A program made the translations under genes and the position numbers. Of a DNA stretch of 49,307 bases, positions 34,919-48,800 are shown one piece after another. The DNA is from Octopus bimaculoides (Eukaryota), in contig NC_068985.1 of assembly GCF_001194135.2 (NCBI RefSeq), forward strand, positions 13,239,537-13,288,843, given 5' to 3'. The notes beneath the pieces were generated by a model. The model was given only the letters and a program-made list of their open reading frames with translations, was not told the origin of the DNA and made no database searches. Position 1 is the first letter of the stretch; each line of letters starts with the position of its first letter.

Positions 34919-35591
34919 ATTTCTATTTTTTAATATATCATATGTATCTTAAAAAATATGTGGCTTTCTCCTTCACAGATAAAAAGTCGATATGTGATGT
35001 GAAACAGACGTTGCAGATATGTTTCGTAAATCGAACAATTACATTGAGGCTTTATTATTTGTTTTTATTCACATAAAATAAAATGCGGAATACAGAGGCG
35101 GTGGTGAAGTTTTGCGCAGGTAACAATAAAACAAAAAAGTGAATTCATTCGTTGAGTGAAGAATCTAATACCGAAGGACTTTGCTGGTGAACATATAAAA
35201 AGGGCTCTGAGTATAAGATTAATTACTAATCTGGCTAAACGAAGTAAAATACTTCGTCTAAATGGCTTAGTTTAATTTTAGTTCTTTTAGCCAAAGACTG
35301 TAACGATGCTGGAGCGCTAATTAGAAAAACTGAATAGCAGGTTGAAATAGTAAGAAGAAAAGTTTGAGCCAGTCGTAGGAGTGGGTTGTGATGATTTCAC
35401 TCAATTGAAAAATATAAAATGAAATATAGTCATGTTTTATATAACATTCTAATGTTTCCACAATTTGATTTGGAAAAGAATGTGAGAATGGTAGAGACAT
35501 CAGAATACCGAACACTATTGAATCTCTTACAAACTATAGCTCCATACATTACATTCTTTAACTTATTAGAGTAAAAATAATTCACATTTTA

Positions 35592-36007
35592 GGAATATCA
35601 ATATTTCTAAGTCTCTCTAAAGGAGACTACGGCAACGGTACTGGATATTAATAGTAATCGCCAAGCCAACATGGCAGTCGAAAAAATAGGACGAATGCTG
35701 CCGTTGATTAGCTCCAAGAGGCCATCGCCTCTAGCTAGCTATGTGACACACGAACCTGTGTCCATTATAACCTTCGAACAGGGGAGGTCAGCCGCTTCCC
35801 CTTGCTGGTCTGGCATCTACAGACTAGTTTCGGAGTATTGCCCCTTATCAATGTAGAGTAGCCGAACCCAGCAGGCGTCGCTACTGACCGTCTGTACGAA
35901 GAATTATTTACCTACATTCAGTGGAATACATCCACTGGTTTTCAAAAATAGGAATATTAGTATTTCTAAGTCTCGCCATGTTGGCTTGGCGATAACTATT
36001 AATATCC
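35592..36007 (-). mobile_element. Candidate HHR retrozyme / PLE-mobilised element: 359-nt unit, 26-nt terminal redundancy, 34-nt inverted end
   Basis: 13-bp TSD AATTCACATTTTA (35579-91 and 36008-20). 26-bp direct repeat at 35590-615 and 35949-974 (2 mismatches). 34-bp inverted repeat at 35642-675 and 35975-36008 (1 mismatch). Internal HHR. Confidence 0.75.
35803..35874 (-). ncRNA. Type I hammerhead ribozyme, U3-A8 core variant, predicted cleavage GUC between 35822 and 35821
   Basis: Minus strand reads TCTACA-TTGATAA-GGGG(CAATA)CTCC-GAAA-CTAG-TC/TGTAGA: 6-bp stem I extended past an internal loop, 4-bp stem II, palindromic ACTAGT stem III. Confidence 0.8.
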
Positions 36008-36119
36008 AATTCACATTTTATTCTTTCAGAATGCTTAAAGAGAAATGCACTAACAATGAGCTTCATGTTTATAAAGTTAACTGCGATAGGATCACTATGA
36101 AATATACGTAATACATATA

Positions 36120-36370
36120 TTGGGTTGGTGCATAATTATTGCGGCTTTTTTCAACAAATTTTATTCAACAAAAACAATAACAATATTTAACAAAAACATC
36201 TTTAGATGACGGTCTGACCGTCTGCCAAGCAAATGGGAAGCAGTAATTGAAGTAGATGGTGAATATGCTCCGGAATAATCATTTAAGGATGTTTTTGTTA
36301 CGTGTTGTTATTGATTTTGTTGAATAAAAATTTGTTGAAAAAAGGCCGCAATAATTATGCACCAGCCCAA
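36120..36370. mobile_element. Mariner-derived MITE, 251 bp, with Hsmar1/MADE1-like TIRs
   Basis: TIR TTGGGTTGGTGCATAATTATTGCGG with ~70-bp imperfect arms and TA TSD. The core encodes a transposase C-terminal remnant, DGLTVCQA/LPSKWEAVIEVDGEYAPE*. Confidence 0.9.
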
Positions 36371-36639
36371 TACATACATGAAACATAAGGTTACGTATTC
36401 GTTATAAATGCGTGGCCTGCCCGATACTTTTCTTTTACGTGGACTCAGGTCCACACTCGGGTTTCAATTATAACTGTCAAGGCACAAAGTTTACAAGCCA
36501 GTGGAATTGACGGCACTTGAAATTGATTATATCCATGACTTCTTACGATGTGTCACTAATTCTGCGTAGAATTATATTAGCTCACCAAACTTTTGACAAA
36601 TATTGAAAATATTCACATATTAATATATCATTTAACTTA

Positions 36640-36733
36640 GCCTATACATAGATACCTATACATAGATGCCTATACATAGATGCCTATACATAGATGCCTA
36701 TACATAGATGCCTATACATAGATGCCTATACAT
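36640..36733. repeat. 14-bp minisatellite (GCCTATACATAGAT)x~6.7
   Basis: Direct reading. Lies at the truncated 3' end of the CR1 fragment. Confidence 0.9.
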
Positions 36734-36754
36734 GCATGAATACATATCGACATG

Positions 36755-38180
36755 CATGTAAATACTCTGGAATTTTTCAGCATTAAACTGCATATTAGTT
36801 TCTTAAGCCCATCTGTAAATTGAGTTCAATTCCTGCTGCAGGTGTGCAACATCGCTGGGGTTCTTTATTTTCTGCGAGACTTTCGTATCGTCTGCGTTGA
36901 GGGAATATCTGAGAGGGCCACTATGAAAAGCAGTGGTCTTAAGACAGTGTCTTGTGGAACACCGCTCACTATTTCTGTTTTCAGAAAGTCATGTAACCAT
37001 TCTCCAAGTTTTCCAGCTATGCTGAAATCACGTAATTTCTGGCATATCATACCATGATCCACTTTATCAAAAGCTTTTGCAAAATCAAGTTATATTACGT
37101 CCACGTTTGAGTTGTTGAGTAACTGCCTCAACACCCAGTCATAGTTCTGTAAGAGCTGGATCAGGCAGCTCCTACCTGGTCGAAAGCCATGCTGGGTATC
37201 ACTCAGCAAGTTATTTTCTTCAAGGAATGCGATTGGTTTCCCTCTGACTATCTGTTCCATGACTTTGCTTATGTGTGAAGTCAGAGAGATAGGCCTATAG
37301 TTTTGTGGCATCTGCTCTGCTTCTCCCTTTATGGATTGGGCATATTATTCCCTCCTTCAGCTTGCTTGGCATCCTACCATTTGCAAGAAGGCTCTGGAAG
37401 AAAATCTGTAGAGTTTTTGCCAGGGCACGCTTACACGATTTGAGGAGGATTTCTGGGAAACCATCAGGACCAGCAGTTGAGTCTCCATCCACCTCATATA
37501 TGGCTAGTAGTATATCGCCTTTGCTAATGTCGTTGCATTCCATTGTAAGTGCCTCCCTAGTTATTGGTGAGGCAGCAAAGAAATCCACTGGTTCGTTCAC
37601 TTGTCTGTGTTCCAACGACGTGGTAAAGATACTTTTGAACTGGTCACTCAGTACGTCACTGATCCTGGTTGGACTATCTGTGAAGGAGCCGTCCTTTTGG
37701 AAGAGGTTTCCTATCATGCAGCCTACTGAGGCTGTTTATTTCGTATAATGAAAGAAGGCCTTTGGTTTTGCCTTGATGCTTTTTTATAACCCAAGCTTCT
37801 TTGTCTGCTCTCTCCCACACATAGGATTGAGGCAGGCTTTTTTTCAATCTCCATCAGAGTTGTTTTTAGGCGGGACCTTCCGCTACTTTTCGAATGTTGG
37901 TTGAGGTGATTTGCAGCCTTCGTCCGTGGTCTCATGAGGATCTTCCTCTCTCTTAGAATCTTGTTCATTTTTGTGTTGGCCTTGTGCTCTGGGACATAGT
38001 TCTGGCATATGGTTTGCATAACAGGCGTGAAATATTCTAGTTCCATGCCAATGTCTTGTGTGGAGAGACGTTTCGGCCAGTCTTATCTGAGGATCTCTTT
38101 TTGGATCGATTTCCAGTCTGCTTTGTGGAAGTTCAGATTGCAGAGATCTTGGGTGTTTCCTTTCGGCTGTATGTCTCTGG
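36755..38180 (-). mobile_element. Decayed CR1/Jockey-group LINE ORF2 (reverse transcriptase), internal fragment
   Basis: Translates as NLNFHKADWKSI...AGPDGFPEILLK...NYRPISLTSHISKVME...QHGFRPGRSC...LDFAKAFDKVDH...SGVPQDTVLRPLLF...ADDTKV...MQFNAEKFQ, with stops, frameshifts and deletions. Confidence 0.92.
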
Positions 38181-38640
38181 CTGTACACAGCTTCTCTTCT
38201 CTGTCCCAAATCATTATATCAGGTCTGTTGTACTTCCATTTTATTGAATTTTCACATGGAGATTCCACTAGCTCGCCTTTTTATTATGACTGGCTATGGC
38301 ATCTACCATACAGTGGATTCTTATTTCTTTGTCCTCGAGGTTATCCTTCCAGCGGATTTCATTATAGAGTGCCCTAGCTACACCATGTCTCATCGGTAAA
38401 TAAAACCGTGATGACGTTTTCGGACAACTGCTTATGTGGGTGATATCTTCGGTTTTAACCCAGCGAAGTCTACACCAGTTGCCACATTTTACTGCTTTTC
38501 CTGCATTTCTATCACTTTTGTGCTTTAGATACTTGGTTGATATTTCCTGTTCCTCAATTGCAAACACATACCCTTCAAAGTGGGAGGTAGTGACCCGGCT
38601 ATTGGTCCATGATAAACTCCCTTGATGATCGGTGTTATTA
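38181..38640 (-). mobile_element. Decayed R4/Dong-like RLE retrotransposon fragment joined to the CR1 fragment
   Basis: Translates as SHFEGYVFAIEEQEISTKYL...NWCRLRWVKTEDITHISSCPK...RHGVA...KYNRPDIMIWDREEKLC (zinc knuckle plus PD motif). Confidence 0.75.
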
Positions 38641-39509
38641 TCAACTGTATGTATGTATGCATGTATGTATGTATGTATGTATGTATGTATTTATGTATAT
38701 ATGTATACAGGGTATTGGTGTGTCCAACTTGATTTTGTTCACCAGTGATCTAGTGTTTCCTTTGCCTGAGTATCTAGTCAAATAATTTGTTCATCATACA
38801 TTCTGGTAATTTATTATAAAATTGTCCGACTCTCGGTTCAAATCTCGATCGGCTACTTACTCAAATACCTCACCAGATTTTGCCCGCTTGTGGTTTAACG
38901 TTCTGGCTTACTCAATGCCAGTTGACATCATTCTTTTATCACGTGTTCTAATCAGTCGATATTTCAAACTACAGTCTACCATTATGACTGGATGGTAGTC
39001 TGTGGACGCCATTTGTTCGTTTATCAAGTATCCTGGTTATTATCAGTGTAGGTTTCAAATTGACTGATTCCCCTCGGACGTAGTTTTCTAATGCCCTGAC
39101 AAGACGAATGCTAACTGAAAATCCTTTGTGGATTTCATTATTTTTTGCTCAAAGGCCATTTTTAATCAATATCATAATCCAGTTATTCAATCTTGGCCAG
39201 AATTCAGCAAAATGAATCGGAACAATATAATTACACATTGATTTTAATTTAGGATTTTGAATCCCGGATGAAAGCCCTTTATGTTCTTTTAGTTGTGTAG
39301 GTATTTCGAATATACATATACAGTGTTTATTTATTCTCCCTTGTAATAAAGTATTTATTTTAAGTAGGGATAAATATTACCTCTTAGTTTTGATTTATAT
39401 TTCTTAATAAGCATGGTTCTTATATTTAGTAGTAACTGGACTGAAGCCTTCTTGATTCATTAATATAAAAGCAAAGTTTGGAACATTTGTTTATTGGACA
39501 AAATTTTAT

Positions 39510-47605: not shown

Positions 47606-47749
47606 GTAAGTGTGCGCGTGTATGTGTGTGTGTATGTGTGTATGTGCATGTGGGATGGGGTGTGCATGCATGATTGTGTTTTAAGATATTGATACCACAA
47701 CTACCTGGTTTCGGGATTTTTTGAGTACACATCTCTTTTACTTTACAGT

Positions 47750-48800
47750 ACGTGTGTAGATGACATTAATGTCCTAGTTAACACCAACTCTAGTAATGAT
47801 AATGTTGAAACTGAGAGAAACATAACGGAGAGCACCCAGCAAGTAGCTAACTCCATCCACCTAAGTATCAAGGCAACTATAGATTACCCCACTAGGCACC
47901 CCAACAATAGATTCCCCATTCTTGATACCGAACTTCGGGTAGAGACTGTGAACAACAGAGTGCAGCTCCTCCACTCCTATTATATGAAACCCATAGCTTT
48001 GAAATATGTCGTTCACAAGAACTCAGCTTTGTCACATGACATGAAAATTAACATACTGATAGCAGACTTAGTTAGGATAATGAAGAACGTGTCCCCTCTA
48101 TGCAAATCCTATGAAACGGAGAAACATGTACAGAACTTCATGTACTACATGCAATTCTCGAGATATGATCAGAATGACAGGGTTCGAATATATAGGGGTG
48201 CTACAAAGAAGTTAGATAACATTATATGTAATGAAACCAGTGGTACCGGCCCTAGATATAGAAACAAAAACTGGAATAGGATACAAAGAGCTTATGACAA
48301 AGAAAACAGGGTGAACATGTGACATAAAACCGACAAATATCAAGGAGTGGTGTTTGTAGAGGCCACAGCCCATGAAGAACTAGGCCGTAGCTTTTGTTAA
48401 GCTCTGAATGAGACCAAACTCAACATTAAGATTGTTGAAAAGCTCGGGAACTCCGTCAGATCGCATCTATGTAGAACGCACCCCTTTGAGAATACCATAT
48501 GCACCAATGATAACTGCCTGCTATGTAGGATTAACCTTGGCATTAACTGTAGAACTAGAAATGTAGTCTACAGCACAAGATGCATAGAAGGTGCTTGTAA
48601 AACATGAACATGACATACATAGTGGAGACATCTAGGAGCATTGCGGAGAGACTAAATGATATTTGAGACAATATGACGGCAAAAAAATGTCCTCCATAAT
48701 CTACCAGCATGCCAAGGACCAACATAGAGGCAACCTGGGTCAACTTCACATCCACATTTTATCCAAGCTCCGAAAGGACCCAACCTTTCAAATACAGTAG
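47750..48800 (+). mobile_element. Decayed Penelope-like element (RT C-terminal part plus GIY-YIG endonuclease), probably Neptune-like
   Basis: Translates as VDDINVL...ANSIHLSIKATIDYPTRHPNNRFPILDTELRV...YYMKP...ILIADLVRIM...CRTRNVVYSTRC...YIVETSRSIAERL, with stops. Confidence 0.85.

What the first reader, a model, noticed from the sequence alone, without database searches (positions are those of the whole stretch)
35592..36007. Candidate retrozyme: TSD-flanked 359-nt hammerhead unit with terminal redundancy
Seen in sequence: a 13-bp TSD encloses, on the minus strand, one 359-nt unit followed by 26 more nt of the same unit's start, with a 34-nt inverted copy of an internal segment at the other end. 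The unit is dense in hairpins: CAGTGGA-ATACA-TCCACTG (35919-37), AGAGGC-CATC-GCCTCT (35717-32), GACACA-CGAACC-TGTGTC, GTCTC-TCTAAAG-GAGAC, plus an HHR. Established knowledge: metazoan non-LTR retrozymes are few-hundred-nt repeats with type I HHRs that yield circular RNAs and are thought to use Penelope-like element machinery. Inference: a copy slightly longer than one unit is what reverse transcription just past one round of a circle or multimer would leave. I am not aware of this family being described in cephalopods but cannot check.
Basis: partly seen in the sequence, partly recalled or inferred. Interest (0 to 1): 0.85.

Follow-up and report, generated by a model that had tools for sequence, protein, structure and literature searches.

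The report
Hammerhead-ribozyme retroelement copy in octopus DNA
A 416-base insertion in what looks like an octopus genome is one dispersed copy of a small non-coding mobile element that carries a self-cleaving hammerhead ribozyme motif and was pasted in the way Penelope-like retrotransposons are; this is a known kind of element (animal "retrozyme"), apparently not yet described in cephalopods.

Summary
A perfect 13-bp duplication (35579-35591 / 36008-36020) brackets 416 bp. These hold one 359-nt unit, 26 nt of terminal redundancy and a 34-nt inverted copy of an internal segment.

On the minus strand there is one type I hammerhead motif with the classic animal geometry:
- a 6-bp helix I with a UAC/U internal loop;
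- a 4-bp helix II with a CAAUA loop;
- a palindromic ACUAGU helix III;
- cleavage after C35822.

Its core reads UUGAUAA, the U3-A8 covariant of C3-G8, which is already known in nature and active in vitro. Rfam does not detect the motif, but Rfam also misses a clear Penelope-element hammerhead used as a control. A descriptor scan gives about 0.003 chance hits per window.

The partial tandem, the inverted 5'-truncated fragment, the tail and the long duplication are the published hallmarks of Penelope-like integration. A degenerate Penelope-like element lies 12 kb away.

Best reading: a monomer-type copy of a non-LTR retrozyme, copied from an RNA that was continuous across the cleavage site. Copy number, tandem arrays and circular RNA could not be tested, because no cephalopod genome was searchable. 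It is a new member of a known kind, of moderate interest.

The parts
35579..35591 (.). Target-site duplication, left copy (AATTCACATTTTA)
   Evidence: family D4: 13/13 identical to 36008-36020. It abuts the insert exactly.
36008..36020 (.). Target-site duplication, right copy
   Evidence: family D4. Base 36008 could equally belong to the inverted arm (1-nt junction ambiguity).
35592..36007 (-). The insertion (416 bp). In sense (minus-strand) order it reads: 34-nt inverted fragment, 26-nt repeat, 273-nt body with the ribozyme, 34-nt segment, 26-nt single-copy segment, 26-nt repeat.
   Evidence: No other copy in the window. The longest ORF is 61 aa and has no relatives among 5.8 billion proteins.
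35949..35974 (-). 5' copy (in sense orientation) of the 26-nt terminal redundancy
   Evidence: family D1: 24/26 identical to 35590-35615, spacing 359 nt.
35590..35615 (-). 3' copy of the 26-nt terminal redundancy. Its last two bases (TA, 35590-35591) overlap the duplication, which is possible microhomology at the priming site.
   Evidence: family D1.
35975..36007 (+). Inverted, 5'-truncated fragment: the reverse complement of 35642-35675, placed at the 5' end of the sense copy
   Evidence: pair I1: 34 nt, 97% complementary. It matches the 'inverted 5'-truncated copy' hallmark of Penelope-like insertions (PMC8557442).
35642..35675 (-). Sense copy of the 34-nt segment. Its end (...UAUCCA-3') is the likely canonical 3' end of the unit.
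   Evidence: pair I1. Inference: the inverted fragment starts exactly at this end.
35616..35641 (-). 26-nt segment present once. It is missing between the inverted fragment and the sense copy, like the junction deletion left by twin priming. Together with 35592-35615 it forms a 50-nt 'tail' beyond the presumed 3' end.
Evidence: tail feature described in PMC8557442.
35812..35863 (-). Type I hammerhead ribozyme motif: GGC-UAC-UCUACA / UUGAUAA / GGGG-CAAUA-CUCC / GAA / ACUAGU / C^ / UGUAGA-U-GCC. U3 = 35851, A8 = 35846; cleavage falls between 35822 and 35821.
   Evidence: Read. Only descriptor hit in the window; 0.0033 expected per window. Helices I and II appear in the minimum-energy fold. The homodimer's minimum-energy fold is the double hammerhead.
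47693..48800 (+). Context, not part of the insert: a degenerate 5'-truncated Penelope-like element (RT motif C, CX4CxxC linker, GIY...YIG endonuclease motifs, three in-frame stops and a frameshift)
   Evidence: 54% identical to an Octopus bimaculoides protein, and 43% identical over 98% of the query to P0006. The P0006 gene is followed directly by a minimal hammerhead.

Best explanation
This is one dispersed, slightly longer-than-unit ('monomer-type') copy of a small non-coding retroelement of the animal non-LTR retrozyme kind. Its unit is 359 nt and carries one type I hammerhead ribozyme on the minus strand.

Proposed life cycle:
1. Tandem source copies elsewhere in the genome are transcribed.
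2. Two neighbouring ribozymes pair through their palindromic helix III (ACUAGU) and cut after C17.
3. The unit-length RNA is ligated into a highly base-paired circle.
4. A Penelope-like element's reverse transcriptase and GIY-YIG endonuclease copy this RNA into a nicked chromosomal site.

At this locus:
- Staggered nicks 13 bp apart gave the duplication.
- First-strand synthesis ran for 385 nt, more than one unit.
- A second priming event from the other DNA end gave the 34-nt inverted fragment, with a 26-nt loss at the junction.
- The ribozyme site lies inside the insert and is uninterrupted. The template was therefore continuous across the cleavage site: an uncleaved multimer or a religated circle, not a linear self-cleaved monomer.

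Shown here: the sequence anatomy, the statistical non-randomness of the ribozyme motif, the predicted folds, and the presence of Penelope-like elements in the same window and in octopus genomes.

Inferred: ribozyme activity, circular RNA, the identity of the mobilising enzyme, and the order of priming events.
For: Duplication, redundancy and inverted fragment:
- All three are confirmed.

Hammerhead geometry:
- The motif is read. It has a 6-bp helix I, a 4-bp helix II, and a 2-bp helix III with a 2-nt loop that together form a palindrome.
- This is the stated architecture of canonical metazoan type I hammerheads (PMC4209133).
- From my own knowledge, the UAC/U internal loop six pairs from the core and the CAAUA loop 2 mirror the Schistosoma and newt ribozymes (UAC/U and CAAAUA).

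Core variant:
- U3-A8 is a compensated pair. It is known in natural hammerheads and active in vitro (PMC3088659).
- About 1,300 examples occur in Schistosoma Penelope-related motifs.

Chance:
- The motif is the only descriptor hit in 49 kb, against 0.0033 expected.

Folds:
- The circular 359-nt RNA folds at -117.6 kcal/mol, z = -4.3, 64% paired, with helices I and II kept.
- The homodimer's best fold is the double hammerhead, 5.6 kcal/mol better than two monomers.

Family traits:
- Unit size, GC below 50% and long duplications match published retrozymes. Mussel units are 350-390 bp.

Insertion style:
- Partial tandem, inverted 5'-truncated copy, tail and variable duplication are the Penelope-like hallmarks.

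Helper elements:
- A Penelope-like remnant lies at 47693-48800.
- O. vulgaris has 31 recently active Penelope-like families (PMC13282606).

Published models:
- The published model predicts cDNAs longer than one unit.
- Dispersed monomers are common in vertebrate retrozyme families.
Against: - Only one copy was seen. There is none elsewhere in the window or in 43 kb of two octopus genomes.
- There is no tandem dimer at this locus.
- No Rfam hammerhead match appears even at E<=10. This is weakened by the control: Rfam also misses the evident Penelope hammerhead in L002.
- The U3/A8 core could in principle be two decay mutations rather than a family trait.
- The unit shows no sequence similarity to the Penelope-like remnants available.
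- Ribozyme activity and circular RNA are untested.
- The assembly has many gaps, so the true number of units at the locus could differ.
Confidence: 0.68

Rival explanations
1. The insert is a heavily 5'-truncated fragment of an autonomous Penelope-like element, essentially its pseudo-LTR with the ribozyme, and not a separate non-autonomous family.
For: - Penelope-like elements carry hammerheads in their pseudo-LTRs, and most genomic motifs are solitary remnants of truncated elements (PMC4209133).
- The insertion architecture is that of Penelope-like elements.
- Vertebrate retrozymes are sister to pseudo-LTRs, so the two can look alike.
- Penelope-like elements are present in this genome.
Against: - The 26-nt redundancy is spaced 359 nt apart, so the template repeated every 359 nt. 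An autonomous element would repeat every 3 kb or more.
- The ribozyme has the canonical 6-bp/4-bp looped architecture typical of retrozymes. It lacks the minimal long-helix-II form seen in autonomous elements, including L002.
- There is no similarity to the Penelope-like remnants at hand.
Confidence: 0.15
2. The insert belongs to an unrelated short interspersed element or unclassified repeat, and the hammerhead-like motif arose by chance or is long dead.
For: - No Rfam match.
- Two core positions differ from the consensus.
- Only a single copy was seen.
- O. vulgaris has about 900 unclassified SINE families.
Against: - The chance rate of the relaxed descriptor is 0.0033 per window. No random hit had a palindromic helix III. 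The UAC/U loop and the CAAUA loop were not even required by the descriptor.
- The two core differences are exactly the pairing partners, changed in a compensating way.
- There is no tRNA- or 5S-like head and no poly(A) or simple-repeat tail.
- The inverted fragment and partial tandem are not LINE/SINE features.
Confidence: 0.07
3. The insert is a cut-and-paste DNA transposon or MITE with short imperfect terminal inverted repeats.
For: - The two ends are 12/17 alike in inverted orientation (GGAATATCAATATTTCT vs TGGATATTAATAGTTAT; and direct reading).
- A mariner-type MITE sits 110 bp away.
Against: - From my own knowledge, a 13-bp duplication fits none of the common DNA transposon superfamilies.
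- The right 'repeat' is really a 34-nt copy of an internal segment.
- The similarity of the ends is weak in AT-rich sequence.
- The model does not explain the 359-nt direct redundancy or the ribozyme.
Confidence: 0.04
4. The terminal redundancy and inversion, or the unit count, are artefacts of a short-read assembly that collapsed or mis-joined a tandem array.
For: - The window holds 3,045 N in several gaps.
- Complex Penelope-type insertions are known to be mis-assembled in short-read assemblies (PMC8557442).
Against: - The duplicated pieces differ at 2/26 and 1/34 positions, so they are distinct sequences and not one read placed twice.
- The perfect duplication closes the structure neatly.
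- No gap lies within 35300-36300.
Confidence: 0.06

Closest known systems
Metazoan non-LTR retrozymes (Cervera & de la Pena 2020, PMC7229834; e.g. the Mytilus galloprovincialis 350-390-bp repeats)
   Same: - A non-coding unit of a few hundred nt (359).
- One type I hammerhead per unit.
- GC below 50%.
- A long target duplication.
- A predicted highly self-paired circle.
- Coexistence with Penelope-like elements.
- An insert longer than one unit, as the circular-template model predicts.
   Different: - Only 1.07 units are present here, not a dimer or multimer.
- The core is U3-A8.
- Helix III is too short to form in a monomer. That resembles the amphibian type more than most invertebrate types.
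- Expression as circular RNA is unknown.
- The host would be a cephalopod, for which the papers searched report no retrozyme.
Classic animal type I hammerheads (newt satellite 2, Schistosoma Sm-alpha)
   Same: - 6-bp helix I followed by a UAC/U internal loop.
- 4-bp helix II with a CAA(A)UA loop.
- Short palindromic helix III that needs a dimer.
The architecture is stated in PMC4209133. The sequence comparison is from my own knowledge.
   Different: - U3-A8 in place of C3-G8.
- Loop 2 is one A shorter.
- The rest of the unit is unrelated.
Penelope-like element insertions (Penelope/Poseidon/Neptune; Craig et al. 2021, PMC8557442)
   Same: - Partial tandem giving terminal redundancy.
- Inverted 5'-truncated fragment at the 5' end.
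- Extra tail at one end.
- Target duplication of variable, longish length.
- A hammerhead inside the repeated part.
   Different: - No RT/endonuclease ORF.
- The unit is about ten times shorter.
- The ribozyme has the canonical looped form, not the minimal form.
L1 twin-priming inversions (Ostertag & Kazazian 2001; cited from my own knowledge)
   Same: The 5' piece is inverted relative to the 3' piece, with a small deletion (26 nt) of template sequence at the inversion junction. Both pieces sit within one target duplication.
   Different: - The enzyme family differs.
- There is no poly(A).
- The template here repeats, so the inverted piece also occurs in sense orientation within the same insert.

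Membership tests
Hammerhead ribozyme, type I | Conserved core C3-U4-G5-A6-N7-G8-A9 ... G12-A13-A14 ... H17 | tested here: inconclusive
   The core is U-U-G-A-U-A-A ... G-A-A ... C17. All positions are consensus except 3 and 8, which changed together to the U-A pair. That pair is documented as natural and active in vitro. Catalysis was not tested.
Hammerhead ribozyme, type I | Three helices around the core, with helix I open and helices II and III closed | tested here: met
   - Helix I has 6 bp, then 3 more bp after a UAC/U loop.
- Helix II has 4 bp (one G-U) with a 5-nt loop.
- Helix III is 2 bp plus a 2-nt loop, which can form only as the intermolecular palindrome ACUAGU.

Hammerhead ribozyme, type I | Match to curated covariance models (Rfam Hammerhead_1 and relatives) | tested here: not met
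   No match at the gathering score or at E<=10. As a control, Rfam at E<=1 also misses the Penelope-element hammerhead at L002 11366-11405. This failure therefore has low weight.
Hammerhead ribozyme, type I | Covariation across homologous copies | not testable with these tools
   No second copy could be obtained.
Metazoan non-LTR retrozyme | Short non-coding unit (about 150-400 nt) carrying a type I hammerhead, without LTR, PBS or PPT | tested here: met
   The unit is 359 nt. The longest ORF is 61 aa with no relatives. One hammerhead motif is present.
Metazoan non-LTR retrozyme | Tandem arrangement (dimers to multimers), so that two ribozymes flank a unit | tested here: not met
   This locus holds 1.07 units and one ribozyme. 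Monomer copies are a recognised part of such families, so the feature may hold elsewhere in the genome. That could not be tested.
Metazoan non-LTR retrozyme | Multi-copy family in the genome | not testable with these tools
   No cephalopod genome is searchable. There are zero extra copies in the window plus 43 kb of octopus DNA. That only excludes extreme abundance.
Metazoan non-LTR retrozyme | GC below 45-50% and, when present, target duplications longer than 4 bp | tested here: met
   GC is 46%. The duplication is 13 bp.
Metazoan non-LTR retrozyme | Expressed as abundant, highly self-paired unit-length circular RNA | not testable with these tools
   Only the fold could be predicted: -117.6 kcal/mol as a circle, z = -4.3, 64% paired.
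Metazoan non-LTR retrozyme | Co-occurrence with autonomous Penelope-like elements | tested here: met
   - A Penelope-like remnant lies at 47693-48800.
- The O. bimaculoides homologue is P0005.
- Active families are reported in O. vulgaris.
Penelope-type (GIY-YIG, target-primed) insertion | Partial tandem, inverted 5'-truncated copy at the 5' end, tail extension and variable-length target duplication | tested here: met
   - 26-nt redundancy.
- 34-nt inverted fragment.
- 50-nt stretch beyond the presumed 3' end.
- 13-bp duplication.
(compared.)
Penelope-type (GIY-YIG, target-primed) insertion | Sequence similarity of the non-autonomous unit to the end (pseudo-LTR) of an autonomous partner | tested here: inconclusive
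   There is no similarity to the three Penelope-like remnants available. However, all three are truncated or degenerate, and one is not from an octopus.

The most novel reading that the evidence does not exclude
Octopuses may harbour an active retrozyme family whose canonical-architecture hammerhead uses the U3-A8 core and which yields abundant ~360-nt circular RNAs. This insertion would then be a direct structural footprint showing two things:
- Retrozyme cDNAs are integrated by Penelope-like RT/GIY-YIG machinery, as indicated by the twin-primed inverted fragment, the tail and the 13-bp duplication.
- The RNA template was continuous across the cleavage site.
The link to Penelope-like machinery has so far been argued only from co-occurrence and pseudo-LTR similarity.
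Probability: 0.3. Interest if true: 0.6.

Novelty: new member of a known kind. Interest (0 to 1): 0.45.

Why it matters
- **Host range.** If the family is confirmed genome-wide, it would extend ribozyme-bearing circular-RNA retroelements to cephalopods. Their genomes are rich in SINEs and in active Penelope-like elements, and their transcriptomes are heavily studied.
- **Mechanism.** This copy is informative because it is bounded by a clean duplication and keeps the cleavage site intact inside the insert. It therefore records what the reverse transcriptase copied: more than one unit, across the cleavage site. It also records how the cDNA was joined, in the Penelope style with an inverted fragment.
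- **Annotation.** The copy shows that Rfam-based annotation misses such ribozymes. Counts such as '235 hammerheads' in the giant squid genome are probably underestimates.

Tried and rejected
- **Rfam.** Searches at the gathering score and at E<=10 found no hammerhead. I kept the motif because of the descriptor statistics and the L002 control.
- **Other copies through proteins.** The 61-aa ORF had no exact record and no homologue among 5.8 billion proteins.
- **Other copies through DNA patterns.** A family-specific hammerhead pattern gave zero hits in the metagenome, prokaryotic-genome and viral collections.
- **Generic pattern.** A generic canonical-geometry pattern in metagenomes gave 6 hits. 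Five are chance. L005 has helix II and the same CAAUA loop but no helix I. It was not pursued.
- **Octopus loci.** I fetched octopus genomic loci through transposon proteins: L001 from O. sinensis and L003 from O. bimaculoides. They share many interspersed repeats with the window at 75-89% identity, which supports an octopod origin. Neither holds a copy of the unit.
- **Paralogous empty site.** None was found.
- **Pfam.** It does not recognise the Penelope-type endonuclease. That identification rests on motifs, homology and the adjacent hammerhead in L002.
- **Ideas rejected.** A tRNA- or 5S-derived SINE: no such hit. A DNA transposon: the duplication is too long and the right end is an internal copy.

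Full report
**1. What is there**

- AATTCACATTTTA occurs at 35579-35591 and again at 36008-36020, 13/13 identical.
- Between these lie 416 bp. Their first 26 nt (35590-35615, sharing TA with the duplication) recur at 35949-35974 (24/26 identical, spacing 359 nt).
- The last 34 nt (35975-36008) are the reverse complement of 35642-35675 (33/34).
- No N gap lies within 35300-36300.
- The unit has no other copy in the 49-kb window.

**2. The ribozyme**

On the minus strand the sequence reads as follows.
- GGC (35863-61), UAC (35860-58)
- Helix I 5' strand UCUACA (35857-52)
- Core UUGAUAA (35851-45)
- Helix II GGGG / loop CAAUA / CUCC (35844-32)
- GAA (35831-29)
- Helix III ACUAGU (35828-23)
- C17 (35822), then the cleavage site
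- UGUAGA (35821-16), U (35815), GCC (35814-12)

This is the architecture that Cervera and de la Pena give for canonical metazoan type I hammerheads: helix I of 6 bp, helix II of 4 bp, and helix III of 1-2 bp capped by a small palindromic loop (PMC4209133). From my own knowledge, the UAC/U internal loop six pairs from the core and the CAA(A)UA loop 2 are the tertiary-contact elements of the Schistosoma and newt ribozymes.

The core departs from the consensus only at positions 3 and 8.
- These two positions pair with each other in the active fold, and here they have changed together from C-G to U-A.
- That covariation occurs in natural hammerheads and is active in vitro (PMC3088659).
- It is frequent in Schistosoma Penelope-related motifs, with about 1,300 hits.
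- The duplicated pieces of the insert differ at only 3 of 60 positions. Two independent decay mutations hitting exactly these two partners in a compensating way is therefore unlikely. I infer that U3-A8 was already in the template.

**3. Is the motif chance?**

- A descriptor asked for a core with C3-G8 or U3-A8, a 6-bp helix I, a 4-bp helix II, GAAA, and U16.1 followed by a non-G. It finds this one site in the window on both strands.
- In 300 dinucleotide-matched random sequences it finds 0.0033 sites per 46 kb. None of those had a short palindromic helix III.
- The descriptor did not require the UAC/U loop, the 3-bp extension or the CAAUA loop, so the true chance rate is far lower.
- Rfam reports no hammerhead even at E<=10. 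As a control, a looser descriptor finds an evident Penelope-element hammerhead directly after an RT/endonuclease ORF in locus L002 (11366-11405). Rfam misses that one too at E<=1.
- The Rfam negative therefore weighs little.

**4. Folding**

- The circularised 359-nt RNA has a minimum free energy of -117.6 kcal/mol. Shuffles give -93.3 +/- 5.6, so z = -4.3. It is 64% paired.
- Helix I is prolonged into a long stem, and helix II is retained.
- The 2-bp helix III with a 2-nt loop cannot close within one molecule.
- The best predicted fold of two copies of the 52-nt domain is the classic double hammerhead, with an intermolecular ACUAGU/ACUAGU helix. It is 5.6 kcal/mol better than two monomers.
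- Any cleavage would therefore need two ribozymes, in tandem or in trans. This locus has one, so it cannot release a unit by itself.

**5. How it was inserted**

Published hallmarks of Penelope-like insertions are these (PMC8557442):
- high 5' truncation;
- partial tandems (pseudo-LTRs);
- an inverted 5'-truncated copy abutting the 5' end;
- a 30-40-bp tail at one end;
- target duplications of variable length;
- a hammerhead in the repeated part.

In sense orientation the insert reads: duplication, inverted 34-mer, 26-nt repeat, 273-nt body, 34-mer, 26-nt single-copy segment, 26-nt repeat, duplication. This fits the hallmarks point by point.

Inferences from this layout:
- The inverted piece begins with the complement of ...UAUCCA-3'. 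That is probably the canonical 3' end of the unit, and the 50 nt beyond it in the sense copy are the tail.
- On a repeating template, the inverted 34-mer lies 26 nt upstream of where the sense copy starts. This is the geometry of twin priming with a small junction deletion. The template span is 445 nt, or 1.24 units.
- The cleavage site is internal and intact. The template was therefore not a linear self-cleaved monomer. It was an uncleaved multimer or a religated circle.
- The published retrozyme model predicts exactly such cDNAs longer than one unit (PMC7761336).

**6. Context**

- The window is AT-rich, gap-ridden eukaryotic DNA.
- A LINE ORF's only named relative is from Octopus sinensis.
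- Fetched O. sinensis and O. bimaculoides loci share many interspersed repeats with the window at 75-89% identity. An octopod origin is therefore well supported.
- At 47693-48800 lies a degenerate 5'-truncated Penelope-like element. It has RT motif C (CVDDI), a CX4CxxC linker and GIY...YIG endonuclease motifs with cysteines between them. It also has in-frame stops and a frameshift, and is flanked by microsatellites.
- That element is 54% identical to an O. bimaculoides protein and 43% identical over 98% of its length to P0006.
- Pfam does not recognise this endonuclease.
- O. vulgaris is reported to have 31 recently active Penelope-like families (PMC13282606).
- The giant squid genome paper lists 235 Rfam hammerhead hits without further study (PMC6962438).
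- None of the papers found mentions retrozymes in cephalopods.

**7. What could not be done**

No cephalopod genome or transcriptome is searchable with the tools. Attempts to reach other copies all failed:
- through ORF look-ups;
- through DNA patterns;
- through 43 kb of octopus DNA fetched via transposon proteins.

Copy number, tandem arrays, permuted ends, covariation and circular RNA remain open.

**8. Verdict**

All single-locus features fit a non-LTR retrozyme copy integrated in the Penelope style, but the family-level criteria are untested and the tandem criterion is not met at this locus.
- The main rival is a truncated pseudo-LTR of an autonomous Penelope-like element. The 359-nt periodicity and the canonical, not minimal, ribozyme form argue against it.
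- This is a new member of a known kind, with two modest points of interest. It would be a likely first for cephalopods. It is also an insertion whose anatomy links retrozyme cDNA to Penelope-type integration and to a template continuous across the cleavage site.

Noticed in passing
window 47693-48800 (+): Degenerate, 5'-truncated Penelope-like element. It has RT motif C, a Neptune-like CX4CxxC linker and GIY/YIG endonuclease motifs. In-frame stops lie at 48320, 48398 and 48605, followed by a frameshift. Microsatellites flank it on both sides. Its last ~55 codons and any 3' hammerhead are missing.
   Followed up: partly
window 36121-36371: Mariner-type MITE with long terminal inverted repeats (TTGGGTTGGTGCATAATTATTGCGGC... 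/ ...GCCGCAATAATTATGCACCAGCCCAA) and flanking TA, about 110 bp from the insert.
   Followed up: no
window 36840-38700 (-): Frameshifted LINE reverse-transcriptase remnant (weak RVT_1 matches). Its closest named relative is an Octopus sinensis uncharacterised protein at 50% identity.
   Followed up: partly
window 35592-35608, 35642-35658 and 35991-36007: Both outer ends of the insert, and an internal site 50 nt from the left end, carry a similar motif (GGAATATCAATATTTCT / TGGATATTAATAGTWAT; 12/17 between the ends). This may be a preferred start site for reverse transcription, or a coincidence in AT-rich sequence.
   Followed up: partly
L002 11366-11405 (+) (ENA ERZ25066847 contig; not octopus, shares no repeats with the window): Minimal Penelope-type hammerhead (CTCA CTGATGA G GCTGCC GATG GGCAGC GAAATAT T TGAG) that starts right after the stop codon of an RT/GIY-YIG ORF. 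Rfam does not detect it at E<=1.
   Followed up: partly
L005 1203-1241 (-) (JGI metagenome contig Ga0315913_1054932): Hammerhead-like motif CTGATGA GACC CAATA GGTC GAAACCGGTC with the same loop 2 as the octopus motif and a palindromic helix III, but no recognisable helix I. It scores 24 bits against Rfam Hammerhead_3, below threshold.
   Followed up: no
window 36650-36735: Tandem array of about six copies of a 14-nt unit (ATAGATGCCTATAC). The window also has many (CA)n/(TA)n microsatellites and several ~1-kb N gaps (3,045 N in all), typical of a short-read draft assembly.
   Followed up: no
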